Below, piece after piece: positions 18,888 through 58,503 of a stretch of DNA of 64,000 nucleotides. Below the pieces are notes generated by a model that was not told where the DNA came from, ran no database searches, and saw only the letters and a list, made by a program, of their open reading frames with translations. The position numbers and the translations under genes were made by a program. Position 1 is the first letter of the stretch; each line of letters opens with the position of its first letter. The stretch spans positions 62,001 through 126,000 of IMG/VR virus record IMGVR_UViG_3300031963_000004; one strand, 5' to 3'.

Positions 18888-18914
18888 ATAAGCTCCTAAT
18901 CAGTCAATGAAGCT

Positions 18915-18943
18915 ATTATATACCCAAACTGATTTATTGTCAA
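18915..18943 (-). promoter_or_regulatory. Early sigma70 promoter
   Basis: TTGACA-ataaatcagtttgggta-TATAAT. Confidence 0.85.
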
Positions 18944-18946
18944 ACG

Positions 18947-22800: not shown

Positions 22801-23070
22801 TTAAAACGGTGAATCTATGATGATACCATTACTAGTTGAGTAACTAACAATATCATCTAATGTATCTATATCTGCCTTAACAGCTTCTTGTAATAATTCT
22901 GGGTTAGTATTAAAGGTAAAATGTACTTCATTACCAGAATTAACCACTTGTATATTGTCGCCAATTTTACCTTTTATATTGTTGATAAAATTTTGCCACC
23001 GTGGTGCTAATGTAGGGTCGTCCCAATAAAAGGTTCCACCATGTCTTTTTACAAATTTAACTGTAATCAT
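22801..23070 (-). CDS. Hypothetical protein
   Basis: 89 aa, in tandem with the upstream gene. Confidence 0.55.
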   Translation of the reverse strand: MITVKFVKRHGGTFYWDDPTLAPRWQNFINNIKGKIGDNIQVVNSGNEVHFTFNTNPELLQEAVKADIDTLDDIVSYSTSNGIIIDSPF

Positions 23071-23073
23071 TTT

Positions 23074-24579
23074 TTAATCCTTTATTATACCTGATAAATT
23101 TAAAATTCTATTCAAATCAACACTTTCACTAGCAGAACCTACTAGTTTGCCTTTGAAAGGATGTTGTTTTGATTTTGCGCCTAACACCGGTCCTATACTC
23201 TTTGCCTTGTCAGCACCTTTAACGTAATCACCATCCTTCTGTTCCTCCTGAACCGGTACAGGAGCTGGGGCCGGTGCAGCGACAGGAGCAGGCTGTTGAG
23301 GCATTGCAGCTGGCGCAGGTGTTGATAATTGTTCTACTCTATCTGCTATAGAATGTAATCTATGGTCTTTGGATTTCTTTAAAAAATTTAAAACCTCACC
23401 TCTTACATCTTCATCTGGATCTTCAGCAGATATTTTTTCTAATATGTCCGATAAATCATCATCTTCTAAATGATTCTGTGCCAATAAACTTTTCGCATTT
23501 TTCGCATCAGGACCTACAGGTAATTCATTGGACAATAAATCAACCAATTGTTCTTGTTGTGAATCATTAGATGGCATTAATGCTTCATCAACTAAGTTAT
23601 TTGACCATTCCTCTAATTCTGTTACCTCATCCATTGGTTTCATTGATACTTTTGTGATTCTAGCAATAATCGGTATTGCTGATTCAATTCTAGGATCGAC
23701 ATGGCTTGTCTTAAACGTTTCAGCTAAATCAGGTTGACCGATTGTATCTTCAATTAAAGTCGGGGTCCAACTTTCAAAGTATGCGTTATACCCTCTTTTA
23801 CCTGTCAACTTACGCAATGCTTCTCTCAAATTACCATAATGAGTTACGCCCTCATTAATAAAATCTTGTGCTGATTCATTAAATTGATTATTACGTGTGG
23901 CTCTTACGAACCCAGCCATTTTATTATAATCTTCAACCATCTCATTGATATGATTCCAACGATCATCATTCACTCTACCACCTTCGGCTATATGTCTAGC
24001 ATAAACTCTAGCCAAACCTGGCTTAGTGGTATTGAGTAAGAATCTTTCACCCTCAATATTTTCAAGGTAAATTCTTGCTACATTTCTATAGCGTTGCTCA
24101 CCTTCTTGTATATCTCTAGTATGTTGTAATTTAATTTTAACGGATGGAATGCTGTCATTATAACTTTGGCGTTTACCCAAAGCATGGTATCCTTCGTCTA
24201 ATCTTGTATGTTCTCTTTTGGCCATATCATATTTGAGGTTGTCCTCATCCTTTAATTCAAAACTTAGTTGGTGATTTTTAGACCATTTCTTAAGTTGTCT
24301 AATAAAATCATACCAGCTATTATCTTCACCAGGTCTAGACCCTGATGGACTATTCGCTATAGTATCATTATAATACACCACCAATTTATGTAATCCATCA
24401 ACACTGACTGTTACTGTACCGTATTCCTCTTTATCTTTTTTAAATATAAATTGAAATACCTCAGCATCGTCTGGAACAGCCATTTGCTTACCAGAACTGT
24501 CTAGCATAGTGGGCTGATATCCTCTGCTTTTAAGAAGTCTAAAAAGGTCAGAATTTAGTGTTTCTTGATTGATGGGCAT
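23074..24579 (-). CDS. Conserved hypothetical late protein
   Basis: 501 aa next to terminase; TAAATA at 24601-24606; Pro/Ala linker near the C-terminus. Confidence 0.65.
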   Translation of the reverse strand: MPINQETLNSDLFRLLKSRGYQPTMLDSSGKQMAVPDDAEVFQFIFKKDKEEYGTVTVSVDGLHKLVVYYNDTIANSPSGSRPGEDNSWYDFIRQLKKWSKNHQLSFELKDEDNLKYDMAKREHTRLDEGYHALGKRQSYNDSIPSVKIKLQHTRDIQEGEQRYRNVARIYLENIEGERFLLNTTKPGLARVYARHIAEGGRVNDDRWNHINEMVEDYNKMAGFVRATRNNQFNESAQDFINEGVTHYGNLREALRKLTGKRGYNAYFESWTPTLIEDTIGQPDLAETFKTSHVDPRIESAIPIIARITKVSMKPMDEVTELEEWSNNLVDEALMPSNDSQQEQLVDLLSNELPVGPDAKNAKSLLAQNHLEDDDLSDILEKISAEDPDEDVRGEVLNFLKKSKDHRLHSIADRVEQLSTPAPAAMPQQPAPVAAPAPAPVPVQEEQKDGDYVKGADKAKSIGPVLGAKSKQHPFKGKLVGSASESVDLNRILNLSGIIKD

Positions 24580-38411: not shown

Positions 38412-38608
38412 CCAATGGATTTTGTTGCTTTTTTAGCACGAATTTGCTGACTGAGTTTGCACGGATTGCTTTCTTCCCAGCCCCAAGATTTAGCGTTATT
38501 TTCTGGATTTTTGTTACAATTATTGTAAAGCCTTTTGGCTTGTGTTTTTGACAAGTTAGTTTCGATTCTAGCAGTACCGTCGGCAAACTCAACATAAAAG
38601 TTAAACAT
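38408..38608 (-). CDS. Early hypothetical protein
   Basis: 66 aa; GGAG SD; own promoter. Confidence 0.6.
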   Translation of the reverse strand: MFNFYVEFADGTARIETNLSKTQAKRLYNNCNKNPENNAKSWGWEESNPCKLSQQIRAKKATKSIG

Positions 38609-38639
38609 TTAGTAACTCCGTATCAATCACTGTAAAGAC

Positions 38640-38668
38640 ATTATATACCCAAACGGATTTATCGTCAA
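38640..38668 (-). promoter_or_regulatory. Early sigma70 promoter
   Basis: TTGACG-ataaatccgtttgggta-TATAAT. Confidence 0.85.
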
Positions 38669-38670
38669 CC

Positions 38671-38700
38671 AAAAAAAATGTTGCTAATTAGCAACATTTT
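38671..38700 (-). terminator. Terminator after the aminotransferase gene
   Basis: aaaatgttgcta-at-tagcaacatttt palindrome followed by an A-run on +. Confidence 0.65.
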
Positions 38701-38724
38701 CAACATTGAAACATTTACAATTTG

Positions 38725-39891: not shown

Positions 39892-40023
39892 AGTATTCTC
39901 CTATGCTCTAAACTAGCAGCGAGATAATACTTAGTTCTGTTAAAACTCTAAAAAATATAAAATTTGACCAAAGCTGTCCTAACCAAATCATAGATAAATA
40001 CTAAAATCAATAAGGAATAACAG

Positions 40024-46527: not shown

Positions 46528-49500
46528 ATGGCAAGATTCGGTTCTACTGCGAGTACGTTTGGTTTAACTTTTTCAGGTAGTTTTACACCAACCTCGACTA
46601 TAACTCCTTCAGCTTCATCAGTCACAGAAAATAGTTCAGTAACTTTTACAATAACAAGCAATTTAATAAGTAAGACAATTAATTGGCGCATAGTTCATAG
46701 TAATACTACCAACGCTGATTTTTTAAACTCCATTGGATCTGGTACAGTTACTACAAATGGTTCAGGGGGAGCATCATTAGTTATAACACCTATTAATGAT
46801 TTACTCTTTCATGCTGCTCCAAAATCTTTCACAATTGTTTTAAGTTTTGAAAGCAAAGATATATCTACCAGTTCAAGCGTTACTATCATTGATGCTGCTA
46901 CTGTATCATTTAGTAGTCCACCCTCAAGTATTAATGAGGGAGTCACAACTACATTTAATGTTACTACGACTAGCCTCTCTAATACAACACTATATTGGAG
47001 TATAGATTTATCTGGTGGTATTACTGCAGGTGATTTTTCCGCCACTTCAGGTCCTTTTTCAATAACAAGTGGTTCAGGATCCTTCAGTATCACCACAACT
47101 CCTGATATGACAACAGAGGGAGGAGAAGCATTTGTATTAAGTATTAGAACTGGTAGCGTTACTGGTACTGTAAGAGCGCAAACTACTGTAAGTATTGCGG
47201 ACACAAGTCTTACAAGAACATATGCATTTGGTACTATACCAACATCTATTAACGAAGGTAATACAGGTATATTTAATGTTAATACTACAAATATACCTAA
47301 CAGTCCAACTACAACATTATACTGGACCATAGTTAATACTTCTACAACTAATCTAGATTTTTCAGCAACATCAGGTTTTTTCTCTATAACGAATAACGCA
47401 GGATCGTTTTCTATAACACCTACACTTGATATGACCAAAACCGGTGTTGAAAGTACAGAATCATTTTATGTGCAAATAAGAACAGATAGTACATCAGGTC
47501 CTGTTGTAGCCACAAGTAACAACGTGAATGTCGTTGATATGGTACCAACTTATTCCGTTGGTCCAAATGTAACTTCTGTAAATGAAGGTGGCACTGTTAC
47601 ATGGACAGTTACAACTAACCATGTTGTTAACGGTACTGTTTTATATTGGAGTGTCAACTTAGCGTTTGGTATGAGTGTTAGTGATTTATTAGACAATGCT
47701 AATGCGACAGGTTCTGTAACTATCAATGACAATATAGGCACTTTCACAACTACTTTAAGAAATGACCAATCCACAGAAGGATCAGAAACTCTTTATGTTT
47801 GGTTATGGACTGATTCGAACAAAACTCAAGGACAGCATGTCGCCCAAAGTATTAACGTTACAGTTACCGACTCAAGTACTGCAATTGTACCATTTGTAGA
47901 AGTTGGTTACACAATCTATCAAGATGTGACTAGTGCGACCTTTACGCAACCTGCAGGTTCTTCATCAGCATTTATCATTGCACAAGGAGGCGGCGGAGGT
48001 GGTGCAGGTGGTTACGCAGTTCCAAACTCTTACGCTGCTAGCGGTGGTGCAGGAGGCGGCGGCTCTGTGGTTAGAGCCTTAGTTAATTTACCTGCAGGTT
48101 CAACACTATCAGTATTTCCAGGAACAGGCGGTGCAGGTAGTTTAGCAGGTAGTACTACTGACGGCGCAGCCGGTGCACCATCCAGTTTAACTGGCACTGG
48201 TATTAGTATATACGCAGCTCCGGGCGGCGGTGGAAAAAATTATAATTTACGAACAGGTGGTGATGGTGGACAATCAATAACAAGTTCTGCAAGTGGAGCC
48301 AATGTAATTGATTTTGGCATAGTATATGGCAGTTCTGGTACTAGCGGCGTATATACTACGGGTTCATTTACTGCGAGTATTGATGGTGGTAGTAGTGCGA
48401 CTACTGCAGGTTCTGGAGTTTATTACCCAATTAGTGGTGGATTAGGAGGACCAGGAGGCGTTACCAATAGCAGTATGTTTGATGCTAAAAACGGAACTTA
48501 TGGTGACGGAGGAGGTGGCGGTGCTGCATACAAAACAACAGGCTCATCTTCATACGGTAGAGGAGGCAATGGAGGTAAAGGAACAGTTATTGTAGTATAT
48601 GGTAACGGTAATGGATTTACAGGAAACCAACCGCAATACACTATAAGTCCAAGTGCAACAACAATCAGTGAAGGACAATCAGTAGTGTTTACTGTAAATA
48701 CTACCAACGTAGCTAATGGCACAGTGTTGTATTGGGATAATGACGTAAACATGCCACATCCCTTCTTCACAACGTCTTTAGATCACACTCAATCAGGTAG
48801 TGTAAGTATAAGCAGTAACACTGCAAGTTTTACGTTAAGTATACCATATGACTCTGTTGATGATAACAATGATAGAATAAGTATAAGGCTATTTAGAGAT
48901 AGCGGAAGAAAATACATGGTTGCAAGGGCAAGTATTGTAACTATAGAAAATTTTGCACAATTAGCTCTAACTCAAAACTGGACTTCAATAACATTCAATC
49001 AAGGCACTGCTGTTACGAATGGACGACCATTTACACCAAGCGGAGGTAGCGGTTCTTATTGGATACTTCCAGACAGTTCCGCTGAAACTGCACTTTCAAA
49101 TGTAGGTTTATCGTGGGATCCTCTCACAGGAACAATAACAGGTACTCCTAATGCTGGCTTAACTGCCTTAACTTTTAATGTACTTTATACTTCAAGTACA
49201 AGTACCGCTAGTCAACAATTATCGAGAACAATAACAGTTAGTGTGGCTTCTGTAGGAGAGTTTACATTGACAGGCAGTCTTAATGACGTTACACAATCTT
49301 GGACAGTACCTGCAGGTGTTACTTCAATATCAATGGTTTGTATAGGCGGAGGGGGCGGGGCAGGCGCATTTGGTTTGCAATATAATACAGCAGGTACACT
49401 ACTTCGCAGATACGGAGGAGGTGCAGGTGGGGGTGGTGCTTTATCATATAGAAATAACTATTCAGTATCACCGGGTTCAACTTTAACTGTAACTGCTGGA

Positions 49501-50193
49501 AAATATGGATCTGGTGCAATAAGTTCTAGGTCAGGCGGCGGTACTGCTGTACCTGATAGATTGGGACCAGATGGTACTGCCGGCGGCACTAGTCAGATTG
49601 TCCTAGGAGCTACTACACTAGTTTCAGCGGGGGGAGGCGGTGCAGGACTCAGAAGCAACTTTTCAGTTAACACATCAGTAACAGGTGGAAGTGGTGGCAC
49701 AAGAAGTGCGATAACAGGTACAGCAGGTGGAAGTGGTGGTAAGGGAGGGAACGGCATTGGTGCTTCATCAGGCACAACTACAGGAATTAGCGGTGGAGAT
49801 GGCGGTGGTGGTGGTGCCGGTGGTTATAGTGGCAATGGTGGTGGAGGGGGAAATGGTAGCACATCTACAACGCAAGCCTCAGGTACAGCAGGCGCAGGCG
49901 GTGGCGGAGGAGGTGGCGCCGGTGGTAGAAATGCTACACCAAGTACAGGTGTTACGACAACTGGAGGCGGAGCTGGCGGAGGTGTTGGTGCATTAGGTAC
50001 TGGTACAAATGGCACTGCCGGGACTTCAACTACACCTAACGGCGGTGGCGGATCGGGAGGTGCTTCAGGTGGACCAAGTGGTGTTGGTGGCAACTATGGT
50101 GCAGGTGGTAACCAAGGTGGTAGAGGTGGACCAGGTTATGTAAGAATTATTTGGCCGGGAACTACAAGAACTTTCCCTAGTGCAGCAACTTAA
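46528..50193 (+). CDS. Virion adhesin/fibre with Calx-beta-like Ig repeats and Gly-rich domains (1221 aa)
   Basis: Five S(V/I)xEG/EN...F(T/N)V modules; two GGGGGG-rich domains, the second starting SWTVPAGVTSISMVCIGGGG. Confidence 0.8.
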   Translation: MARFGSTASTFGLTFSGSFTPTSTITPSASSVTENSSVTFTITSNLISKTINWRIVHSNTTNADFLNSIGSGTVTTNGSGGASLVITPINDLLFHAAPKSFTIVLSFESKDISTSSSVTIIDAATVSFSSPPSSINEGVTTTFNVTTTSLSNTTLYWSIDLSGGITAGDFSATSGPFSITSGSGSFSITTTPDMTTEGGEAFVLSIRTGSVTGTVRAQTTVSIADTSLTRTYAFGTIPTSINEGNTGIFNVNTTNIPNSPTTTLYWTIVNTSTTNLDFSATSGFFSITNNAGSFSITPTLDMTKTGVESTESFYVQIRTDSTSGPVVATSNNVNVVDMVPTYSVGPNVTSVNEGGTVTWTVTTNHVVNGTVLYWSVNLAFGMSVSDLLDNANATGSVTINDNIGTFTTTLRNDQSTEGSETLYVWLWTDSNKTQGQHVAQSINVTVTDSSTAIVPFVEVGYTIYQDVTSATFTQPAGSSSAFIIAQGGGGGGAGGYAVPNSYAASGGAGGGGSVVRALVNLPAGSTLSVFPGTGGAGSLAGSTTDGAAGAPSSLTGTGISIYAAPGGGGKNYNLRTGGDGGQSITSSASGANVIDFGIVYGSSGTSGVYTTGSFTASIDGGSSATTAGSGVYYPISGGLGGPGGVTNSSMFDAKNGTYGDGGGGGAAYKTTGSSSYGRGGNGGKGTVIVVYGNGNGFTGNQPQYTISPSATTISEGQSVVFTVNTTNVANGTVLYWDNDVNMPHPFFTTSLDHTQSGSVSISSNTASFTLSIPYDSVDDNNDRISIRLFRDSGRKYMVARASIVTIENFAQLALTQNWTSITFNQGTAVTNGRPFTPSGGSGSYWILPDSSAETALSNVGLSWDPLTGTITGTPNAGLTALTFNVLYTSSTSTASQQLSRTITVSVASVGEFTLTGSLNDVTQSWTVPAGVTSISMVCIGGGGGAGAFGLQYNTAGTLLRRYGGGAGGGGALSYRNNYSVSPGSTLTVTAGKYGSGAISSRSGGGTAVPDRLGPDGTAGGTSQIVLGATTLVSAGGGGAGLRSNFSVNTSVTGGSGGTRSAITGTAGGSGGKGGNGIGASSGTTTGISGGDGGGGGAGGYSGNGGGGGNGSTSTTQASGTAGAGGGGGGGAGGRNATPSTGVTTTGGGAGGGVGALGTGTNGTAGTSTTPNGGGGSGGASGGPSGVGGNYGAGGNQGGRGGPGYVRIIWPGTTRTFPSAAT

Positions 50194-50444
50194 TTCATTA
50201 TTTGAGCAATGAGTATTAATTTTTGTAGGTGATTAATACTCTTATTAATTTTTTCAATTTGACTTGCCAGCATACTAGTTCTTTTAGTTTGCCTAGCAAT
50301 AACTTCAGACCTACTTAATTCAGTAACCATATCTTCAATATTCTGAAGCATTTTCTTTAAGTCTGGGTTATGACTAACATTCTTCAAGTCTTTCCGTAGG
50401 TTGGCGCTAATGATTTGCCAATCCAAAGCAACTTTGAGTTCCAT
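50190..50444 (-). CDS. Hypothetical helical protein
   Basis: 84 aa; converges on the adhesin gene. Confidence 0.55.
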   Translation of the reverse strand: MELKVALDWQIISANLRKDLKNVSHNPDLKKMLQNIEDMVTELSRSEVIARQTKRTSMLASQIEKINKSINHLQKLILIAQIMN

Positions 50445-50468: not shown

Positions 50469-50486
50469 TTGTAACAGAATTGTCAT
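50469..50486 (+). promoter_or_regulatory. Pho-box-like tandem repeat upstream of pstS
   Basis: TTGTAAC-agaa-TTGTCAT; TGTAAC at 50470 and TGTCAT at 50481 give the 11-bp period of PhoB boxes. TAAATA follows at 50498-50503. Confidence 0.65.
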
Positions 50487-50546
50487 ACTATAACTATTAA
50501 ATATTTATTGCAAATGAATATTTTTTATTTAAAGGAGACACACAGT

Positions 50547-51572
50547 ATGAAAAAGGTATTTGCATTATTAACCTTAATGGTTTCACAAGTCGCAATGTCA
50601 GCAGAATTTACTGGGGCAGGTGCGACTTTTCCATATCCGATTTACGCAAAGTGGGCAGAAGCTTATAAAGCACAAACTGGGATAGGATTGAATTATCAGA
50701 GCATTGGTAGTGGTGGCGGTATTCGTCAAATCAAAGCAAAAACAGTTGACTTTGGTGCAAGTGATATGCCATTAAAACCAGAAGAACTTGAGAAAGAAGG
50801 ACTAGTGCAATTTCCAGCTATCATAGGTGGAGTTGTTCCAGTTGTAAACTTAGATGGTATACAAGGTGGTCAACTAAAATTAACAAGTGATGTTATTGCT
50901 AACATACATTTAGGTAAAATTACTAAATGGAATGACAAAGCTATTGCCGAAATAAATCCTGGAGTTACATTACCTGCATTAAATATCACAGTCGTACATC
51001 GTGCAGATGGATCAGGTACAACATTTATTTGGACAAATTATCTAAGCAAAGCAAACGCAGACTTTCAAAAAACAGTAGGCGAGGGCACAGCAGTTAAATG
51101 GCCAGTAGGTGTAGGTGGTAAAGGTAATGAAGGTGTAGCAGCGCAAGTTCAGCGCATCAAAGGTGCTTTTGGTTATGTAGAATATGCATATGCTAAAAGA
51201 AACAAAATCGCACATACGCAATTAAAAAATCGTGATGGCAATTTTATTCAACCAGATGACAGTACATTCAAAGCAGCAACAGCTAATGCAGACTGGAATA
51301 ATGCTCCTGGCATGTACTTATTATTAACTTGGCAAACAGGCAAAGACGCATGGCCTGCAACTGGCGCAAGTTTTATTCTAATGCACAAACAACAAGCAGA
51401 TGCATTAACTGGTCGTGCTATTTTGAAATTCTTTGATTGGAGTTACAAAAATGGTAGCAAGATGAGTGAAGAATTAGAATATGTTCACTTACCACAGTCA
51501 GTTATTAAGTTGATACAAGAAAACTGGCGCCGTGACTTCAAAGGTCCAGATGGTAACGCAATTTGGAAATAA
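50547..51572 (+). CDS. pstS: Phosphate ABC transporter substrate-binding protein PstS
   Basis: Signal peptide, GAGATFPYP, GSGGG, DFGASD, RADGSGTT, GKGNEGV; AGGAG SD before ATG at 50547. Confidence 0.96.
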   Translation: MKKVFALLTLMVSQVAMSAEFTGAGATFPYPIYAKWAEAYKAQTGIGLNYQSIGSGGGIRQIKAKTVDFGASDMPLKPEELEKEGLVQFPAIIGGVVPVVNLDGIQGGQLKLTSDVIANIHLGKITKWNDKAIAEINPGVTLPALNITVVHRADGSGTTFIWTNYLSKANADFQKTVGEGTAVKWPVGVGGKGNEGVAAQVQRIKGAFGYVEYAYAKRNKIAHTQLKNRDGNFIQPDDSTFKAATANADWNNAPGMYLLLTWQTGKDAWPATGASFILMHKQQADALTGRAILKFFDWSYKNGSKMSEELEYVHLPQSVIKLIQENWRRDFKGPDGNAIWK

Positions 51573-51581
51573 GGGAAAATC

Positions 51582-52988
51582 ATGAAAAAATTTGCAAAAT
51601 TAAGTATTATATTAGCATTAGCAACTGCAATACCTGCTTTTGCTGATGAGTACAAAGAAACATTAAGTATTCTTAGAGATAAAGGCATTCTTACACAACA
51701 AGAGTATAATTCTAAACTCCAAGCATATGAAGAAAGAGAAGAAAACAAAAAGTTTGCAGAACAAAGAATCGACAAAGATGTTAGCGATAACAACAAGTGG
51801 AGACAAGCTAGAGCAAACGATGGTTCAGTTACCGAAAACGGGATCGGACTCAAAAGTAAAGATGGAAACAATACCATCCAACTTACAGGTAGACTTCATA
51901 TGGACTATCGTCAGTACGACCCCGCTTATGGTGCAGGTCAAACCACAGATTCGTATCAGAACCTAGCAGAAGTTCGTCGTGCTAGATTTGGTGTACGTGG
52001 ACAGTTCGCCAAAGACTTTAGATATCAGTTACTTGCTAACTTCGGCAATGAAGTAGGTGCCTCTGCAACTACTACAACAGCAGATGAAATGTGGGTAAAC
52101 TATGCTGCTAATCCTGAAATGCAATTTCAGTTTGGTTTGTTTAAAATGCCTTTTAGTTTAGAACAATTAACAAGCTCTAACAATATTGATTTTATGGAGC
52201 GTAGTTTAATTGGTAATACTGATGGTGAGTTTATACCAGGAAAAGAAACTGGCTTTATGTTACATGGTATTCCTAAGCCTGGTCTACTCTATCAAGTAGC
52301 ACTAAGCCGTGGTCGTGCTAACAAAGATGCATCTAATGATGGCTTTGATTACATCGGTCGTGTTGTAACAAACGTAGCCGAATTACAAGGTAGCAAAGCA
52401 TATGTATTACACTTAGGTGCAGCATATAGCACAGGCGAAGTTAAAGGTGGTGTTACACCAGCAAGCGGTAGAACAGAATCACGCAGTCAATCAGCATGGT
52501 TCACAGGTCCAGCGTTAAGTGGTACTACTACAAGAACACGCCAAGGTCTTGAAGCAGCATTTGCTTATAATGGTCTAAAGGTACAAGGTGAACAGTTCCA
52601 ATTCAATTATGATCCTACTACAGGTAACGATCAGAAAATAAATGGATACTATGTGCAAGCTTTGTATAACTTGACAGGCGAAAGTCACAACTACAAAGAT
52701 GGTATCTTTAATTGGATCAAACCTAACAACCCAACTGATAAAGGTGGTAAGGGTGCATGGCAGGTAGGTGTGCGTATCAGCGAGTTTGATGCTAGTGATA
52801 TTACTGTAGTTACTGGCAAATCAAATCGTGCTACTGCTATGACTTATGGAGTTACTTGGTTCTGTACAGATAATCTACGCTTTATGTTAAACTACGTAGA
52901 CACAAAGTTTGACAGTCTTGTAGGTAGCTCAGGTAGTCGTGTAAACGGTGACAGAGCAATCATGTTCAGGAGTCAGTTAAGCTTCTAA
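51582..52988 (+). CDS. Phosphate-selective outer-membrane porin, OprO/OprP family
   Basis: Signal peptide, coiled-coil leader, VRRARFGVRG, GLFKMPFSLEQLTSSN, FMERS, terminal QLSF; co-transcribed with pstS. Confidence 0.88.
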   Translation: MKKFAKLSIILALATAIPAFADEYKETLSILRDKGILTQQEYNSKLQAYEEREENKKFAEQRIDKDVSDNNKWRQARANDGSVTENGIGLKSKDGNNTIQLTGRLHMDYRQYDPAYGAGQTTDSYQNLAEVRRARFGVRGQFAKDFRYQLLANFGNEVGASATTTTADEMWVNYAANPEMQFQFGLFKMPFSLEQLTSSNNIDFMERSLIGNTDGEFIPGKETGFMLHGIPKPGLLYQVALSRGRANKDASNDGFDYIGRVVTNVAELQGSKAYVLHLGAAYSTGEVKGGVTPASGRTESRSQSAWFTGPALSGTTTRTRQGLEAAFAYNGLKVQGEQFQFNYDPTTGNDQKINGYYVQALYNLTGESHNYKDGIFNWIKPNNPTDKGGKGAWQVGVRISEFDASDITVVTGKSNRATAMTYGVTWFCTDNLRFMLNYVDTKFDSLVGSSGSRVNGDRAIMFRSQLSF

Positions 52989-52990
52989 AA

Positions 52991-53010
52991 TAAGCCCTTC
53001 GGGGCTTTTT
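52991..53010 (+). terminator. Terminator of the pstS-porin operon
   Basis: aagccc-ttcg-gggctttt. Confidence 0.85.
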
Positions 53011-53012
53011 TA

Positions 53013-53678
53013 ATGGAGATAAATAGACATATCATGCTCCCAACAATAGCTTTATTTTTACACCAACCTAAGTGTTCAGTGCAAAGCGGAAATGGGATTA
53101 TCAAAGCATTAAGCCCACACTTTAGATTCAAGATTTTCACAAAACATGAACTAGAGGATGACTTTTTTGATGATGTGGATATTATTGCAGTTCCCGGAGG
53201 AATCGGAGACAGCGATACTTACAAATATCTGATGAAAATTCATGCTCAGTCCATACGGAACTTTGTCGCATCAGGTGGAAAGTACTTAGGAATTTGTATG
53301 GGTGCTTATTGGGCCGACACTGAATACTTAGGGCTATTGAATACGACAAGAGTGGTTCAATATATAAAAAGACCAGGTACCGACACACGCCGACCCCACG
53401 CAAAAAACATTCAAATCACATGGGAAAACAATCCTATGAATATGTACTTCTTTGACGGGTGTGCTTTGGTCGGGGATGAGAGTAAATTTGAAACTATCGC
53501 TAGATACAAGAACGGCGATCCAATGGCTATTATTCAAGATAATGTCGGATTAATAGGTTGTCATCCAGAGAGTGAAAAGCATTGGTATGATGGTTATAGT
53601 TGGATGCGTAGACATTATCATAACAACACTCATGGTAAATTATTGTTGGATTTTACATATCGCTTACTAAAGAAATAA
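53013..53678 (+). CDS. Class I glutamine-amidotransferase-like (BPL_N-type) protein
   Basis: VPGG, YLGICMGAY nucleophile elbow, GCHPE triad; likely start at 53034 after TAAATA at 53020-53025. Confidence 0.8.
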   Translation: MEINRHIMLPTIALFLHQPKCSVQSGNGIIKALSPHFRFKIFTKHELEDDFFDDVDIIAVPGGIGDSDTYKYLMKIHAQSIRNFVASGGKYLGICMGAYWADTEYLGLLNTTRVVQYIKRPGTDTRRPHAKNIQITWENNPMNMYFFDGCALVGDESKFETIARYKNGDPMAIIQDNVGLIGCHPESEKHWYDGYSWMRRHYHNNTHGKLLLDFTYRLLKK

Positions 53679-53883: not shown

Positions 53884-54084
53884 TCAACCACCGGGTGAAT
53901 TGTAATATTTAATGTAGATACATCTTGGACTTACTCTGTAACCATCTGTATACCAAGTAGCCCTGATTCTTTCTTTTTCACGCATACATGTTTCGTAACT
54001 AGGCTGAGGAGCCTGTATAACTCCCTGACTTTGTGTAAAGCCATAAGATTGTGGCAAATACATACTGATAATGAGAATCCACAT
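53884..54084 (-). CDS. Small Cys-pair protein (family A)
   Basis: MWILIISM...PSYETC...C; TAAATA at 54090-54095. Confidence 0.6.
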   Translation of the reverse strand: MWILIISMYLPQSYGFTQSQGVIQAPQPSYETCMREKERIRATWYTDGYRVSPRCIYIKYYNSPGG

Positions 54085-54101
54085 ACTATTATTTAGTTAA
54101 A

Positions 54102-54123
54102 AATAGGGACCGAAGTCCCTATT
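54102..54123 (-). terminator. tmRNA terminator
   Basis: Minus strand aatagggac-ttcg-gtccctatt followed by a U-run. Confidence 0.85.
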
Positions 54124-54124
54124 A

Positions 54125-54433
54125 CTATTTTTGGTAACAAGGGATAGTTCCCCCGGAGATCATGCTGCTAGAGCAAAAACCTCATCGTTAGCTGCGTTTG
54201 CAGTTATAATTTTGCTTGATTTACGGTCATCGCCTACCGTGCTGTCCACTCGCCTACTCTTGACCCTGTCGAAACCATGTCTGGCCCATCAAAAGCAAGT
54301 TGGAGCTACTTATTATACCAACATTCAGGAACCGTAGCGGCCGCACAGTATCCGAAGCCATTTGCTTTTGGTGGACCAGGCGGGAGTCGAACCCGCGTCC
54401 AGAACCCTTTTGGGGTTGCTTCATACAGCAATA
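54125..54433 (-). ncRNA. ssrA: tmRNA, circularly permuted two-piece gene
   Basis: Acceptor piece ends GGACGCGGGTTCGACTCCCGCCTGGTCCACCA (3' end at 54369). An 81-nt intervening segment follows. The coding piece starts GGGCCAG at 54287; G3.U70 pair present; tag ORF 54201-54160 reads ANAANDEVFALAA-stop. Outer ends are approximate. Confidence 0.93.
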
Positions 54434-54439
54434 ACCTGT

Positions 54440-54468
54440 AGTTTATATTTATTCGGAAAGATTGTCAA
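54440..54468 (-). promoter_or_regulatory. Sigma70 promoter of ssrA (a TAAATA lies within the spacer)
   Basis: TTGACA-atctttccgaataaata-TAAACT. Confidence 0.75.
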
Positions 54469-54472
54469 CAAA

Positions 54473-54667
54473 TTAGGGTTTCTTAACTTGTTGTTCGGGC
54501 ACACAAAATGCGGTCATGTTTGGTCTATTGTGTGTGATGCTACGTGCGACTTCTAAACATTCTTCCATTCTGTCAAATGTTTTCCATTGACTTTCATGGA
54601 TATGTCCTGAGATAATAACAGCAACAATTAATACATAATTCACATATAATTCCCGGTTATATGTCAT
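54473..54667 (-). CDS. Small Cys-pair protein (family A)
   Basis: YVLIVAVII...FDRMEEC...C; start uncertain (an internal GTG is possible). Confidence 0.55.
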   Translation of the reverse strand: MTYNRELYVNYVLIVAVIISGHIHESQWKTFDRMEECLEVARSITHNRPNMTAFCVPEQQVKKP

Positions 54668-54834: not shown

Positions 54835-57800
54835 TTACGGGTATAAATTATCGTAGTACTCTTTGATCCAAGCCCAGTCATAGGTTAATCTTAGTTTCTC
54901 AAAGTCACCCTTAACACTTTCATAATACTTGACCGCTTCGTTTGCACCCTTCAAGCAATATTCGCTGTATTCTCCGGTAGCCACGGTAAGCCAAATGTCA
55001 AGTCTTTCTTTGTTTTCTTCAGATCCTATAGTTTCTACGCTATGCTTAAGTTTGACTACTTCTCTAAAAGCAGTTCTCCAAGTATCCCATTTGCTTGTAT
55101 TAAACCGACTAATCCCTGAATTAATATTAACAACTTCGTGTTCACTGTCAAGTGTAAAGTCTAGACCCTTAACAATAGTATTAAGTGTCAACTTTTTATT
55201 GTTGGCGACAATAGCTTGGTGACCATATTCTAATCCATTTAATGGGTTAGTAGCAGTAAAGATATAATGCTTTGGTATCTGTAATCTATCTGGTTGCCAA
55301 TCAAAATTAAAATCTTCATTGACTTTAAGCTTTGCGTTCACTAAGAAATACCAAGGTGTGTTTGACATTCTAGCTGCTTCATGTTGACTAGCTACACGAC
55401 CTTTAATACCATCAACACCTACTACTATGTTAGGCAAGTCTTTTGCTATATTCAACAGATGTTCGTAGTTTTCTTCCGCGCAAGCTTCACCATTACTAAA
55501 GAAAACAATATCTAATGGTTTGCTTTGCGATAATTTTTTACTTGTGATTATATATGGATAATCGTAAATTTCTTTCTTAACAAACTTACTTGTTTCTTTG
55601 GGAGCAATGATTCTACTTGCACCTGTACTTGTGATTATAACAGTTTTATCTTCTGCTTTCCATAATGACATTGTATCAATATCTTCATGCCTCATGTTTT
55701 TATTATCTGCTGTAATAAGAACTTGATATGGAAAGTCTACTTGATTGTGAATGCTATTAACCAAAGTATCATCATCTACTATAGTAACAGGAGCAGGCAA
55801 TCTTGGAACTGATTGCTCACCTTTAAAATTTATTTCAGGGTAATCATCTAACTTTTTAATAATTGGTAAAAACATTCTTAATTCATTCACATTTACTAAG
55901 AATGTGTCACCGAACTTTTGATTATTACTAGCAAACACATACATCTGTTCGCTTGTACCTGTATCAAACGTCTGAGTAAAATCAAAATTACTATAATCAC
56001 AAATTGAACTACATATCCAAATATAATGCTCGTTCTTAGTAGGCAATGATTCTACAATAGAAAAGAACGTCTGATAGTAATCTGTGTCGTGTGGGATAAC
56101 TGTGATATTTCTGTTTGGAACTCTGTCTTTTAAAGTTTCTAAACAAGTGTGTTGATTGCCAAAATCAATTAGATAAATGTCATGCAATGATTCTTTTATC
56201 TTAGCCTCTTTGTTAACAAAGTTTAGCATAGACATATCTTCAAGTAGTTTATCTTTTTTATATTCAATAAGATATGAATCCTTATTTACAAGATAAGTGT
56301 AACCCCACTGAGTCCATTGGGTCTTAAATACGTGAAGCATTCTTGTTTGCCAAATACTAGGATAGTAGTTAAAATCAAAATCAGCATAATCAATCTCGCT
56401 ACTTAAAACCCAAAACAGTTTAGTTTTAGACTTGTTGGCACAACTAGCAATTACTTCAGCCCAGCCGTTAGCGAATCTTGTTTTCTTTATTTGAGGAAAC
56501 TTTTCTTGTAGTATTTCAAAATTTTCTAAACTATCCTTATTCATTCTATCAATATAAAACATATCTAGTTTAGAATCTACATCAATTTCTAGTTCAGAAA
56601 CATAATTATACTGTATTTTTTCTTTACAGTGTTTTTCAATAACAAAGTACGTCTGTAGGTCTAGGCTCTCTTTGTTTCCAAAAACATGCACATATGGGGA
56701 TTCATAATCTTCGGGTTCCCAACTAAAATCAAACTTGTCGTAATTTAATTCAGCGTTTAGGGCCCAAAACATTTCATCAGGATGTTGTTTAATTAAATCC
56801 TCAAGTGTAGTTTCAATATAATATTTTTTGATGTTTTTGTTAATTAATTTTACAATAGGATTAGCAACAAACTTTGTCTGCGTTGCACCTTCTATTTTAT
56901 ATTCTAACACATATTTTAAATTATCTCTATACTCATTTTTGACTCCAAATTTGTAGATATAGGGAGGGTCTCTATCATCATGATGCCAACTATAATCGAA
57001 TAAAATTTCATCAGTAGTTAACTTTGTAAATCTTGATTCATCCGGCAATTTGATTGCTGCTTGAAATGTTTGATATTTAATACCTTCATAATCAGCAACC
57101 ACATAAACAGGACCACCCGTATTTTGCCATTGTGTGCCAAACATATGTAAGTAAGGTTCGTCTTTTCTTGGTTCCCAACTGAAATCAAACTTACTTACAT
57201 CTAGACCTTTAGGCACTGCCCAAAAATTATCTTCAGGGAATTCATTTATTAAATCATCTAAATCGGTTTCAATATAATGAATTACCGTATCAGATGATTT
57301 TTTTGCTATCTGAAATGTTTGATATTTTACTCCCATATAATTAGGAACGATAAGTGCAGGTCCTGCATCTTGATTCCATTGCGTACCAAACTGATGTAAA
57401 TACGGAGGTTCTCCTATAGGAGGTTCCCAACTATAATCAAAATCTTCATCATTTAAATTTTCAGGTACTACCCAAAAAGTTTCAGTTCTATGTTCAGATA
57501 TTATTTTTTGTAACGTATTAATTTTATCTAATGTATATTTTTTAAGTGGTATTTTAGCTGCTAAAGGATAATCATGATACTTGTAACCTTTATTAGAAGG
57601 TACTACATATGCAGGTCCATCTGATGTATTAAATCTCGTACCGAATTGATGAATATAAGGAGGGTCATATCTGTTAGGTACCCACGTAAAATCAAATGAT
57701 TCTTTGTCTATATTGTTAGGTACTGCCCAAAATGCATCACTAGGATATTCGTAAATTAAATCCTCAACTGTCGTAGTATCATCTATTTCATAAATAGGAA

Positions 57801-58503
57801 CCATACACTTTCGTAATGCTTTTTGACTTTGCTGATACTTAGTACCTTGATTATTCGGTACTACATAGCAAGGTCCTCCATCAGAGTCCCATTGTGTTCC
57901 AAATACATGAACATATGGAGGTTCATGTTTATTCGGCATCCAACCAAAGTCAAAGTTTGATACATCTACGTTAACAGGCACAGCCCAAAATTCTGTATCA
58001 AAGTATAAGCTAACTAACTCTTTGAATTCTTTTTGAGAGGAAAATGTAAGGATAGGAGGAATTTTATATTTTAAGTCTATTGAAATATACTTTTGTTTTT
58101 CAGCGCCCTCTACATGATATTCTGCAACAATTTTTTCTTCTTCATCTATTGAACCAATAAAAATATACACGAAGGGTTCTTCAGTGTCATCAGGATGCCA
58201 GCTAAAGTCAAAATCTAATTTATCATTTTTAATAAAAAAGTTTTCTTTATGTTGCAAATGTCTTACTGTTTGAAAGTCATGGTACTTAACACCTTCACTT
58301 TCGGGAATTACAAACTTAGGTCCGCCAGTTTTCTGCCATTGTGTTCCAAACTGATGCGTATAAGGTCTGTCATAGTAACTAGGTCTCCATGAAAAGTCAA
58401 AGCCCTCAGTATCAACATTATCGGGGATAACCCAATAACCTTGTTCCCATAACTTAATTCTTTCTTCTATATCGTAATCTTTTTGTTCTACCATCATGAA
58501 CAC
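54835..58503 (-). CDS. 1222-aa protein with about 11 FDF(S)WxP repeats and a C-terminal glycosyltransferase-like domain
   Basis: Repeats read from the translation; the C-terminal ~230 aa are homologous to the 63173..64000 protein. Confidence 0.75.
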   Translation of the reverse strand: MFMMVEQKDYDIEERIKLWEQGYWVIPDNVDTEGFDFSWRPSYYDRPYTHQFGTQWQKTGGPKFVIPESEGVKYHDFQTVRHLQHKENFFIKNDKLDFDFSWHPDDTEEPFVYIFIGSIDEEEKIVAEYHVEGAEKQKYISIDLKYKIPPILTFSSQKEFKELVSLYFDTEFWAVPVNVDVSNFDFGWMPNKHEPPYVHVFGTQWDSDGGPCYVVPNNQGTKYQQSQKALRKCMVPIYEIDDTTTVEDLIYEYPSDAFWAVPNNIDKESFDFTWVPNRYDPPYIHQFGTRFNTSDGPAYVVPSNKGYKYHDYPLAAKIPLKKYTLDKINTLQKIISEHRTETFWVVPENLNDEDFDYSWEPPIGEPPYLHQFGTQWNQDAGPALIVPNYMGVKYQTFQIAKKSSDTVIHYIETDLDDLINEFPEDNFWAVPKGLDVSKFDFSWEPRKDEPYLHMFGTQWQNTGGPVYVVADYEGIKYQTFQAAIKLPDESRFTKLTTDEILFDYSWHHDDRDPPYIYKFGVKNEYRDNLKYVLEYKIEGATQTKFVANPIVKLINKNIKKYYIETTLEDLIKQHPDEMFWALNAELNYDKFDFSWEPEDYESPYVHVFGNKESLDLQTYFVIEKHCKEKIQYNYVSELEIDVDSKLDMFYIDRMNKDSLENFEILQEKFPQIKKTRFANGWAEVIASCANKSKTKLFWVLSSEIDYADFDFNYYPSIWQTRMLHVFKTQWTQWGYTYLVNKDSYLIEYKKDKLLEDMSMLNFVNKEAKIKESLHDIYLIDFGNQHTCLETLKDRVPNRNITVIPHDTDYYQTFFSIVESLPTKNEHYIWICSSICDYSNFDFTQTFDTGTSEQMYVFASNNQKFGDTFLVNVNELRMFLPIIKKLDDYPEINFKGEQSVPRLPAPVTIVDDDTLVNSIHNQVDFPYQVLITADNKNMRHEDIDTMSLWKAEDKTVIITSTGASRIIAPKETSKFVKKEIYDYPYIITSKKLSQSKPLDIVFFSNGEACAEENYEHLLNIAKDLPNIVVGVDGIKGRVASQHEAARMSNTPWYFLVNAKLKVNEDFNFDWQPDRLQIPKHYIFTATNPLNGLEYGHQAIVANNKKLTLNTIVKGLDFTLDSEHEVVNINSGISRFNTSKWDTWRTAFREVVKLKHSVETIGSEENKERLDIWLTVATGEYSEYCLKGANEAVKYYESVKGDFEKLRLTYDWAWIKEYYDNLYP

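What the first reader, a model, noticed from the sequence alone, without database searches (positions are those of the whole stretch)
50469..53010. Pho-box-controlled pstS plus phosphate porin operon
Phage pstS under host PhoB control is established for cyanophages. Here pstS is paired with an OprO/OprP-type outer-membrane porin, so both envelope steps upstream of the host PstCAB are supplied. The leader has an 11-bp-periodic TGTAAC/TGTCAT repeat and a phage late promoter, predicting dual control by host phosphate status and phage timing. The porin might also alter receptor availability.
Basis: partly seen in the sequence, partly recalled or inferred. Interest (0 to 1): 0.6.

Follow-up and report, generated by a model that had tools for sequence, protein, structure and literature searches.

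The report
Phage phosphate-uptake operon: PstS plus porin
A giant freshwater phage carries a two-gene unit, a phosphate-binding protein plus an outer-membrane phosphate-type porin, behind a conserved host-style phosphate-starvation switch; two unrelated phage lineages share the unit, which suggests these viruses boost their host's phosphate intake during infection.

Summary
Window 50547-51572 encodes a canonical PstS and 51582-52988 an OprO/OprP-family porin. They lie 9 nt apart, behind one leader and before one terminator hairpin (52992-53007). The genome is a real jumbo myovirus (portal, capsid, terminase, sheath).

The Pho-box-like repeat TTGTAAC-AGAA-TTGTCAT (50469-50486) lies 10 nt before TTAAAT(A). 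Host-like bacterial pstS promoters show the same geometry. One copy in 223 kb is what chance gives. Its weight comes from position and conservation: 33 of 40 distinct leaders in related phages keep an 11-bp-periodic pair, while their flanks are randomised.

Both genes are under purifying selection (dN/dS about 0.1). Each forms a single phage clade next to freshwater Burkholderiales. They are adjacent only in phages. The cassette occurs in two phage lineages whose capsid proteins are only about 35% identical. No phage copy of PstCA or PhoB was found.

The late-promoter claim is only partly right. The phage's own late motif is (G)ATAAATA. The exact copy in the leader is on the opposite strand, and the pstS strand has a one-off variant. 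Dual control and receptor effects remain untested.

This is a new variant of a known kind. The precedents are cyanophage pstS, a putative porin in P-SSM2, and oprP in amoC-phages.

The parts
50469..50486 (+). Pho-box-like site: two 7-bp direct repeats, TTGTAAC and TTGTCAT, separated by AGAA (11-bp period); 13 of 18 positions match the E. coli consensus CTGTCATAWAWCTGTCAY
   Evidence: Read directly. It is the only strict match in the 223-kb genome. GTAA..GT.A columns are invariant or nearly so in 15 diverged leaders with mean column identity 39%. 33 of 40 distinct leaders keep a GTNAY-N6-GTNAY pair against 0.55 in shuffles.
50497..50503 (+). -10-like box TTAAAT(A), 10 nt after the Pho box; TAAATA is invariant in relatives. 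It is also a one-mismatch variant of the phage late motif ATAAATA
   Evidence: Host-like bacterial pstS promoters have Pho box, then N10, then TATATT/TATAGT.
50502..50508 (-). Exact copy of the phage's late-type motif ATAAATA on the minus strand, facing the divergent 84-aa gene
   Evidence: genome-wide, 39 of 62 ATAAATA copies lie within 100 nt upstream of gene starts (14-fold enrichment). This site is listed for gene 112190-112444(-), which is window 50190-50444.
50487..50514 (-). Sigma-70-like promoter match TTTGCA-N16-TATAGT (9 of 12) on the minus strand, overlapping the pstS control region
   Evidence: This is a consensus match only.
50531..50538 (+). Ribosome-binding site AAAGGAGA, 8 nt before the pstS ATG
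   Evidence: Read directly. GGAG is conserved before the start in relatives.
50547..51572 (+). pstS: periplasmic phosphate-binding protein, 341 aa, Sec signal peptide ending AMSA|E, no lipobox cysteine
   Evidence: NCBIfam NF008171 431 bits and TIGR00975 382 bits. PDB PstS chains match at E 3e-118 to 1e-112, with the motifs GAGATF, IGS, GASD and RADGSGT kept. dN/dS is 0.09.
51582..52988 (+). OprO/OprP-family outer-membrane porin, 468 aa: signal peptide 1-21, periplasmic helical extension about 22-83, beta-barrel 84-468
   Evidence: Pfam PF07396 186 bits. OprO 4RJW and OprP 2O4V match at E about 1e-19. AF2 model pLDDT 85.5. Foldseek top hits are OprP at 3e-27 and OprO at 2e-24, against about 1e-13 for general porins. 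dN/dS is 0.10.
52992..53011 (+). Intrinsic terminator: hairpin AAGCCC-TTCG-GGGCTT followed by TTTT
50190..50444 (-). Divergent 84-aa gene of unknown function; it shares the 102-bp control region
   Evidence: no Pfam match. It is kept at 65-75% identity in L003, L004, L062, L063 and L069.
53018..53025 (+). Canonical late-type motif GATAAATA directly after the terminator, at the head of the next gene (GATase-like/BPL_N, 53013 or 53034 to 53678). It marks the operon as a separate regulatory unit
   Evidence: Read directly. Motif defined. Gene family.

Best explanation
This is a self-contained phage phosphate-acquisition cassette. One transcript encodes a periplasmic PstS and an outer-membrane porin of the OprO/OprP family. 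Both are exported by the host Sec and BAM machinery.

The proposed mechanism is as follows. The porin raises outer-membrane permeability for phosphate-type anions. The extra PstS captures phosphate in the periplasm and hands it to the host's own PstCAB. More phosphorus then reaches the replication of a roughly 350-kb genome in phosphorus-poor lake water.

Transcription most likely starts at a host-RNA-polymerase promoter. There the Pho box (50469-50486) takes the place of a -35 element, 10 nt before TTAAAT(A). Phosphorylated host PhoB would then switch the operon on when the infected cell is phosphate-starved.

Shown: the gene identities, the operon anatomy, conservation and purifying selection, phage-specific adjacency, spread across two phage lineages, and the absence of phage pstCA and phoB.

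Inferred: PhoB binding, P-dependent induction, anion selectivity, and docking of the phage PstS on host PstCA.
For: Identity.

Operon: a 9-nt gap between the genes, one leader and one terminator.

Real phage: portal, major head protein, terminase, sheath and helicases. The capsid protein is 64-67% identical to those of PA5oct, Serratia BF and Vibrio 2.275.O-type jumbo phages.

Conservation: pstS lies directly upstream of the porin in 79 of 80 related IMG/VR loci. Median dN/dS is 0.09-0.10 with dS 0.7-2.1.

Promoter: GTAA-N-GT.A-N10-TAAATA is invariant or nearly so in 15 leaders whose other columns are randomised. 33 of 40 distinct leaders hold an 11-bp-periodic pair against 0.55 in shuffles. 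A second phage lineage has a different sequence (TTGTGAC-N4-CCGTTAC) with the same period and the same 10-11 nt distance to TTTAGT.

Host-like promoters: Burkholderiales pstS genes carry CTGTCATAAAGCTGACAT-N10-TATATT plus GTGACA-N5-ATGACA. Their porin genes carry TGTCAT-N5-TGAAAA. Those genomes encode a PhoB-like protein next to pstS at 283-291 bits.

Dependence on the host: no PF00528 permease and no PF00486 regulator in G000 or in three cassette-bearing phage genomes that are at least 98% complete.

Origin: phage PstS forms one clade (SH-aLRT 98) sister to 23 bacterial PstS (99). Phage porin forms one clade (100) inside a 99-supported group with 18 Burkholderiales porins.

RNA libraries from three studies hold exact or near-exact contigs of both genes.

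Precedent: PhoBR control of cyanophage pstS, and PhoB gel shifts on phage promoters (PMC10976474).
Against: No experiment shows PhoB binding or induction. PMC10976474 states that Pho-box prediction in phage genomes is unreliable without binding assays.

The first half-site matches the E. coli half-site at only 4 of 7 positions. The strict pattern is not enriched genome-wide.

The -10-like box is poor by sigma-70 standards.

No terminator was predicted between the upstream late structural genes (ending at 50193) and the leader, so read-through could give P-independent expression.

In the porin, OprP Lys121 is replaced by Gln195, and positions 62 and 114 are Arg135 and Lys188. Phosphate selectivity is therefore not assured.

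The host is not identified beyond 'freshwater Burkholiales-like'. The RNA contigs cannot show a start site, and DNA carry-over is not excluded.
Confidence: 0.65

Rival explanations
1. Dual control. The operon would be read both by host RNA polymerase with PhoB and by the phage's late transcription machinery through the TAAATA core. It would then be made late in every infection and boosted under phosphate stress.
For: TAAATA is invariant in all 15 class-A leaders, which is stricter than a typical -10 element. It is the core of the phage's own late motif (G)ATAAATA. TTAAATA is 4-fold enriched upstream of genes, and two other copies sit at canonical distances of 26 and 32 nt.
Against: The base before TAAATA is always T (C in none, A in none) in the pstS leaders, whereas the late motif has A. 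The box lies 50 nt before the ATG, against a peak of 22-31 nt. The smaller-genome lineage with the same cassette has TTTAGT instead and no TAAATA core. The exact motif in this leader points the other way.
Confidence: 0.2
2. Constitutive or read-through expression. The repeat would be only a -35-like element (TTGTCA-N16-TATTTA), or have no function. The operon would be transcribed from an ordinary sigma-70 promoter or by read-through from the upstream late structural genes, independent of phosphate.
For: TTGTCA is 5 of 6 to TTGACA. No + strand terminator was predicted between 50193 and the leader. One genome-wide match equals the chance expectation.
Against: The promoter scan found no + strand sigma-70 match of at least 9 of 12 in the leader. 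This reading does not explain conservation of the distal half-site TTTGTAAC, 11 bp upstream. The alternative -10 (TATTAT/TATTTA) is not conserved in L057, L061, L070 and L073, while TAAATA is. An opposing gene lies between the late genes and the leader.
Confidence: 0.1
3. The porin serves phage-phage competition rather than nutrition. It might replace or mask a host porin that phages use as a receptor (superinfection exclusion). The precedent is the Lc porin of lambdoid phage PA-2, recalled from the literature and not checked here.
For: The porin is an outer-membrane, surface-exposed protein made during infection. The stem leading to the phage porin clade is long (0.38 against 0.17 for PstS).
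Against: The porin is strictly paired and co-transcribed with pstS in 79 of 80 loci. All pore residues that are invariant in the bacterial subfamily are kept. Non-strand segments of the barrel are as conserved as strands (0.80 against 0.83), so there are no hypervariable loops. dN/dS is 0.10. No integrase was found and the phage is of a lytic jumbo type, so there is no lysogenic-conversion setting.
Confidence: 0.05

Closest known systems
Cyanophage pstS (P-SSM2, S-PM2d and other T4-like cyanophages) under host PhoBR control
   Same: A phage copy of the periplasmic phosphate-binding protein feeds the host PstCAB. Pho boxes lie upstream and the host two-component system induces the gene under P limitation (PMC10976474; 10.1101/2021.07.20.453049). 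82 of the 91 phage records with a PstS match are named as cyanophages, Synechococcus phages or Prochlorococcus phages or are cyanophage-like by name.
   Different: Those PstS are only 33-38% identical to this one. The host here is a betaproteobacterium-like freshwater heterotroph. The Pho box is of the enterobacterial TGTCAT type, not the cyanobacterial PyTTAAPyPy(T/A) type. A bona fide porin is co-transcribed with pstS.
P-SSM2 gp247, a putative porin-like protein induced with pstS
   Same: It raised the idea that a phage supplies an outer-membrane channel together with PstS under P limitation.
   Different: gp247 has no recognisable family. It was called porin-like only after PSI-BLAST at E about 1e-6 and modelling. 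The protein here is a full member of Pfam Porin_O_P, and OprP is its best structural match.
oprP genes in group C amoC-phages of freshwater ammonia oxidisers (bioRxiv 10.64898/2026.06.18.733297)
   Same: Large freshwater phages (155-338 kb) carry an OprP-family porin as an auxiliary gene.
   Different: Those copies are described as highly similar to the host gene and are used as host markers. The text does not mention pstS (0 occurrences). The clade here is at most 54% identical to any bacterial porin in the species-representative genomes. It is always paired with pstS. No amoC was found in this record (that control search rang nowhere).
Pseudomonas aeruginosa OprP and OprO
   Same: The fold is the same: Foldseek TM 0.72-0.76 normalised to the target. 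The counterparts of R34, R59, R60, D94, S124, S125 and R133 are conserved. Both are Pho-regulon members in their own organism (established knowledge).
   Different: Identity is only 24%. K121 is Gln. Positions 62 and 114, which set the phosphate-versus-diphosphate preference, are Arg and Lys. There is an added 60-residue N-terminal helical extension. In Pseudomonas the genes are not adjacent to pstS.
E. coli PhoB-dependent promoters (pstS, phoA, phoE)
   Same: An 18-bp Pho box of two 7-bp direct repeats with an 11-bp period replaces the -35 element and ends about 10 bp before the -10 hexamer (established knowledge). The geometry here is identical.
   Different: The distal half-site is TTGTAAC. 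The consensus in the phage clade is TGTAAY rather than TGTCAY. Binding is untested.

Membership tests
PstS, phosphate ABC transporter substrate-binding protein | Score above the curated cut-off of the equivalog models | tested here: met
   NF008171 scores 430.9 bits (cut-off 339) and TIGR00975 scores 382.4 bits (cut-off 205).
PstS, phosphate ABC transporter substrate-binding protein | Phosphate-ligand residues (E. coli T10, F11, S38, D56, R135, S139, G140, T141; numbering from memory) | tested here: met
   The motifs GAGATF, IGS, GASD and RADGSGT are all present in the query and aligned with solved PstS chains. The 1IXH match runs query 19-338 against chain 2-319.
PstS, phosphate ABC transporter substrate-binding protein | Export signal for the periplasm | tested here: met
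   The N-terminus is MKKVFALLTLMVSQVAMSA|EF, read directly. No dedicated signal-peptide predictor was run.
PstS, phosphate ABC transporter substrate-binding protein | Productive docking on PstCA | not testable with these tools
   Only inferred, from 70-78% identity to PstS of candidate host genomes.
Porin_O_P (OprO/OprP family) | Family profile match over the barrel | tested here: met
   PF07396 scores 185.9 bits against a cut-off of 20.9, covering residues 99-442.
Porin_O_P (OprO/OprP family) | OprP-type beta-barrel fold | tested here: met
   AF2 model with pLDDT 85.5. Best PDB matches are OprP 2O4V at E 3.4e-27 and OprO at 2e-24; the next class, general porins, is at about 1e-13.
Porin_O_P (OprO/OprP family) | Arginine ladder and central phosphate site (R34, R59, R60, D94, K121, S124, S125, R133) | tested here: inconclusive
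   R104, R132, R133, D168, S198, S199 and R207 are kept and invariant in 41 phage and bacterial sequences. K121 is Gln195. Positions 62 and 114 are R135 and K188. The outer ladder (R218-R242) could not be aligned.
Porin_O_P (OprO/OprP family) | Anion and phosphate selectivity; trimer | not testable with these tools
   This needs bilayer conductance measurements. A trimer job would exceed the size limit of the complex predictor.
PhoB-dependent (Pho box) promoter | Two 7-bp direct repeats with an 11-bp period, resembling CTGTCAT | tested here: met
   TTGTAAC-AGAA-TTGTCAT matches 13 of 18 positions. It is conserved in relatives.
PhoB-dependent (Pho box) promoter | The box replaces the -35 element and ends about 10 bp before a -10 hexamer | tested here: met
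   A 10-nt spacer is followed by TTAAAT. The layout is the same in bacterial pstS promoters L174 and L175.
PhoB-dependent (Pho box) promoter | PhoB~P binding and induction at low phosphate | not testable with these tools
Candidate hosts encode PhoB-like proteins, and the phages encode none.
T4-type late promoter | Match to the phage's own recurrent late motif, on the sense strand and at the usual distance | tested here: not met
   The sense strand has TTAAATA 50 nt before the ATG. Canonical (G)ATAAATA sites peak at 22-31 nt. The exact copy is on the minus strand.

The most novel reading that the evidence does not exclude
The pstS-porin pair is a mobile, self-regulated phosphate-scavenging module. 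It was assembled in phages, since the two genes are not adjacent in any of the 80 bacterial loci examined. It has since been passed between unrelated phage lineages that share freshwater Burkholderiales hosts: jumbo phages of about 350 kb and phages of about 160 kb whose capsid proteins are about 35% identical. It would be a clear case of viruses re-engineering the outer-membrane permeability of their host for nutrient uptake, with the host's own starvation regulator as the switch.
Probability: 0.45. Interest if true: 0.7.

Novelty: new variant of a known kind. Interest (0 to 1): 0.58.

Why it matters
Lakes are commonly phosphorus-limited, and a 350-kb phage genome is costly in phosphorus. Phage pstS has so far been studied almost only in marine cyanophages. 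This cassette extends Pho-regulon hijacking to phages of freshwater heterotrophs and adds the outer-membrane step.

It also offers a compact, testable promoter. A 102-bp region holds a conserved Pho box, and natural sequence variants exist in two phage lineages.

If the porin is phosphate-selective, infected cells would have altered envelope permeability and altered phosphate uptake kinetics. That bears on nutrient-flux models and on how viral auxiliary genes are catalogued. The porin subfamily, with Gln at the OprP K121 position and Arg and Lys at positions 62 and 114, is also an untested selectivity variant.

Tried and rejected
- Near-identity and protein searches of the INPHARED phage collection found no close genome and no porin homologue.
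- The first scan of species-representative genomes with exact peptides found nothing. Only the degenerate scan from an alignment reached bacterial homologues.
- I tested whether this is one of the published amoC-phages. No AmoC match was found, but that control search rang in no genome, so this is weak evidence.
- Host assignment through the phage tmRNA failed. Only a conserved 35-nt stretch matched candidate genomes.
- Taxon names of the genomes reached through loci are withheld. Some record titles ('uncultured Bifidobacterium', 'Bordetella parapertussis') are plainly placeholder labels on Burkholderiales-like contigs, so the host is given only as freshwater Burkholderiales-like.
- The T4 late consensus TATAAATA is not enriched. 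It was replaced by the de novo motif (G)ATAAATA.
- There is no genome-wide enrichment of the Pho pattern, and no second Pho box was found, for example before phoH.
- I looked for hypervariable porin loops as a sign of receptor arms races and found none.
- RNA-library contigs show presence but give no start site, strand or level.
- One search was a mistaken test call and returned an error.
- No complex prediction was run. The porin trimer exceeds the size limit, and a PstS-PstCA job would not discriminate between phage and host PstS.
Full report
**What is there.**
The window is bases 62001-126000 of a 223,151-bp IMG/VR virus record. CheckV rates it about 63% complete, and its GC content is 36.5%.

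On the + strand, an ORF from the ATG at 50547 to 51572 encodes a 341-aa protein. It scores 431 bits on the NCBIfam PstS equivalog, whose cut-off is 339. An AAAGGAGA ribosome site lies 8 nt before this ATG.

Nine nucleotides after its stop codon, 51582-52988 encodes a 468-aa protein. It scores 186 bits on Pfam Porin_O_P, whose cut-off is 20.9.

A GC-rich hairpin at 52992-53007 with a T-run follows the porin stop. The gene upstream (50190-50444) is on the other strand. The two genes therefore share a 102-bp leader and one terminator.

**It is a phage.**
PHROG scans find the following:
- a portal protein (E 1e-110);
- a major head protein (1e-99);
- a large terminase (8e-106);
- a tail sheath (4e-79);
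- a DnaB-type helicase, among others.

The capsid protein is 64-67% identical to those of jumbo myoviruses such as Pseudomonas PA5oct, Serratia BF, Vibrio 2.275.O and the E. coli and Erwinia phages of about 350 kb. No tyrosine integrase was found.

**The proteins.**
*PstS.* It aligns end to end with solved PstS structures (5WNN at E 3e-118; E. coli 1IXH at 7e-114). It keeps the phosphate-ligand motifs GAGATF, IGS, GASD and RADGSGT. Its N-terminus is a Sec signal without a lipobox.

*The porin.* It matches OprO (4RJW) and OprP (2O4V) at E about 1e-19 over residues 84-457.

I built an AlphaFold model on 41 phage and bacterial sequences; its mean pLDDT is 85.5. The model shows a signal peptide, two helices (23-33 and 39-78) and a barrel. 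Foldseek ranks OprP first (3.4e-27) and OprO next. General porins follow thirteen orders of magnitude behind.

Using the 4RJW and 4RJX pair to fix the numbering, the pore residues compare with OprP as follows:
- Kept, and invariant across all 41 sequences: R34, R59, R60, D94, S124, S125 and R133, which are R104, R132, R133, D168, S198, S199 and R207 here.
- Not kept: K121 is Gln195.
- Positions 62 and 114, which distinguish OprP from OprO, are Arg135 and Lys188.

The protein is thus a full family member, but its exact substrate preference is open.

**The leader.**
The sequence reads TTGTAAC-AGAA-TTGTCAT (50469-50486), then 10 nt, then TTAAAT(A) (50497-50503). The GGAG ribosome site follows further on.

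This is the geometry of an enterobacterial PhoB promoter: an 18-bp box in place of the -35 element, ending about 10 bp before the -10 hexamer. That description rests on established knowledge, not on a test here.

The strict pattern occurs once in 223 kb on both strands, against 1.15 expected from dinucleotide shuffles. By count, the motif alone proves nothing.

The weight comes from comparison. Eighty related loci in IMG/VR carry the porin at 68-100% identity, and 79 of them have pstS directly upstream. Synonymous divergence between copies is 0.7-2.1, so neutral positions are close to saturated, and dN/dS is about 0.1 for both genes.

In an alignment of 15 diverged leaders of the window's type, mean column identity is 39%. 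Even so, GTAA of the first repeat, GT.A of the second and TAAATA are invariant or nearly so, at fixed spacing.

A second group of leaders has a different sequence, TTGTGAC-N4-CCGTTAC, with the same 11-bp period. TTTAGT follows it after 10-11 nt. A third group has four periodic units.

In all, 33 of 40 distinct leaders hold a GTNAY-N6-GTNAY pair on the sense strand. Shuffled leaders give 0.55 on average and never more than 4. The leaders are related to one another, so this is not a clean probability.

**Host-side comparison.**
The nearest bacterial porins are 45-54% identical. The nearest PstS are 70-78% identical and come from the same set of freshwater Burkholderiales-like genomes.

The pstS promoters of those genomes read CTGTCATAAAGCTGACAT-N10-TATATT or TATAGT, with a further GTGACA-N5-ATGACA upstream. 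Their porin promoters read TGTCAT-N5-TGAAAA.

Each genome has a PhoB-like gene at 283-291 bits a few kb from pstS. That is just under the strict cut-off of 296 but about 100 bits above the next paralogue.

The phage record holds no OmpR/PhoB-type domain and no PstC/A-type permease. The same is true of three cassette-bearing phage genomes that are at least 98% complete. So the phage supplies only the two envelope-side components. It must rely on the host's PstCAB and, if the box is functional, on the host's PhoB.

**Origin and spread.**
In maximum-likelihood trees, all 41 distinct phage PstS form one clade (SH-aLRT 98). That clade is sister to 23 bacterial PstS, and the join has 99 support.

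All 45 distinct phage porins form one clade (100). It lies inside a 99-supported group with 18 Burkholderiales porins.

In none of the 80 bacterial loci is pstS within 5 kb of the porin. The adjacency is therefore a phage feature.

The genes have the low GC of the phage (38-39%), against 42-66% in the bacterial loci.

The cassette is accessory. Twelve records with capsid proteins 79-94% identical to this phage's have no Porin_O_P match. They include one complete genome of 374 kb and one of 303 kb rated 86% complete.

Conversely, the cassette occurs in phages of about 160 kb whose capsid protein is only 34-37% identical. One of these has terminal repeats and is rated 100% complete. In that lineage it sits among ribonucleotide reductase genes, next to a SegE-type homing endonuclease.

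Since the phage proteins are monophyletic, the simplest reading is transfer of the cassette between phage lineages. The PstS and porin trees also disagree in places within the phage clade, which hints at recombination inside the cassette. I did not test this.

**The late-promoter claim.**
The T4 consensus TATAAATA occurs 9 times in the genome. A de novo look at upstream regions shows the phage's own motif, (G)ATAAATA. Of its 62 copies on both strands, 39 lie within 100 nt upstream of a gene start, a 14-fold enrichment. Most lie 22-31 nt before the ATG, and many precede structural genes.

The pstS strand of the leader has TTAAATA instead, 50 nt before the ATG. The base before TAAATA is never A in any pstS leader.

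The exact ATAAATA in this leader is on the minus strand (50508 to 50502) and faces the 84-aa gene. A sigma-70-like match, TTTGCA-N16-TATAGT, also lies on that strand.

The gene after the terminator starts with a canonical GATAAATA at 53018-53025.

So the operon is flanked by late-type signals but does not itself carry a canonical one. The invariance of the TAAATA core leaves dual reading possible; I put it at about 0.2. A constitutive or read-through reading is less likely, because it does not explain the conserved distal half-site.

**Expression in nature.**
Near-identical DNA is held in freshwater metagenomes of 16 studies. RNA libraries from three studies contain exact or near-exact contigs. 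One run has four contigs with no mismatch, all inside pstS and the porin and none in the flanks. A contig of a relative bridges the pstS end and a porin start.

These are assembled contigs. They cannot give start sites, strand or level, and DNA carry-over is not excluded.

**Comparison with the literature.**
- Host PhoBR control of cyanophage pstS, and PhoB gel shifts on phage promoters, are documented. The same paper warns that predicted Pho boxes in phages often fail experimentally (PMC10976474).
- A cyanophage P-SSM2 protein, gp247, was proposed to be porin-like on weak evidence (10.1101/2021.07.20.453049).
- A 2026 preprint lists oprP among host-like genes of amoC-phages, without mentioning pstS (10.64898/2026.06.18.733297).
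- I found no description of a pstS-oprP operon in phages.

**Verdict.**
The late-promoter part is not supported as stated. This is a new variant of a known kind of viral auxiliary function. It is well suited to direct tests.

Noticed in passing
window 54069-54482 (-): The phage encodes a tmRNA of the permuted, two-piece betaproteobacterial type. Rfam beta_tmRNA scores 134.6 bits against a gathering score of 84. ARAGORN gives the tag peptide ANAANDEVFALAA. It lies 1 kb downstream of the cassette and points to a betaproteobacterial host.
   Followed up: partly
whole genome G000; in the window e.g. 53018-53025 (+) and about 39990-40000 (+): The recurrent late-type promoter motif is (G)ATAAATA(C/T). 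39 of its 62 copies lie within 100 nt upstream of gene starts, mostly 22-31 nt before the ATG. It resembles T4's TATAAATA, but the first base is usually G.
   Followed up: yes
window about 18888-18950 (-) and about 38596-38720 (-): Two nearly identical sigma-70-type promoters, TTGAC(A/G)ATAAATC(A/C)GTTTGGGTATATAAT, precede small genes (genome 80591-80887 and 100353-100595). Other TTGACA-N17-TATAAT-like early promoters are scattered through the genome.
   Followed up: no
window 53013-53678 (+); homologues within 6 kb of the cassette in most of L003-L081: A GATase-like/BPL_N-like protein (Pfam BPL_N 40 bits, GATase 24 bits) travels with the cassette in both phage lineages, but at varying positions. 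In L012 it lies between nrdA and nrdB. Its function is unknown.
   Followed up: partly
related leaders L039, L042, L054, L071, L075, L006, L007, L070, L061 (just after the TAAATA box); window 50500-50522: Different palindromes or hairpins follow the -10-like box, for example TGTGCAATGCACA, TGTACACATGTACA and GGTACAACATAGTGTTGTACC. Their sequences differ but pairing is kept. This suggests a 5'-terminal mRNA stem-loop or an operator. The window's own version is weak (-1.9 kcal/mol, against -5 to -16 elsewhere).
   Followed up: partly
window 46528-50193 (+) and 54835-58503 (-): Two giant proteins flank the cassette. One is a 1221-aa protein rich in Gly and Thr with Gly_rich_2 domains. The other is a 1222-aa protein made of repeated modules of about 90 aa with a motif like FDFSWxP..PPYxHxFGTQW, and it has no Pfam match.
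   Followed up: no
G000 22885-23655 (+), outside the window (L209): The phage also carries phoH (PF02562, 235 bits). No Pho-box match was found before it.
   Followed up: partly
L012 1-13404: In the smaller-genome lineage the cassette lies between nrdA, the GATase-like gene, nrdB and a methyltransferase on one side, and an IscA-like Fe-S protein, an SNase-like nuclease, a SegE-type GIY-YIG homing endonuclease and a 2OG-Fe(II) oxygenase on the other. The homing endonuclease could help the cassette move.
   Followed up: no
trees: Within the phage clade the PstS and porin trees disagree. For example, L069 groups with the window's set for PstS but with L054 and L063 for the porin. L007, L070 and L061 sit on a long branch for PstS only. 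This suggests recombination between the two genes.
   Followed up: no
L082, L085, L087, L089, L099; L092, L098, L135: Some public record titles ('uncultured Bifidobacterium sp.', 'Bordetella parapertussis') sit on contigs whose porin and PstS group with freshwater Burkholderiales. The labels look like placeholders or errors and should not be used for host calls.
   Followed up: no
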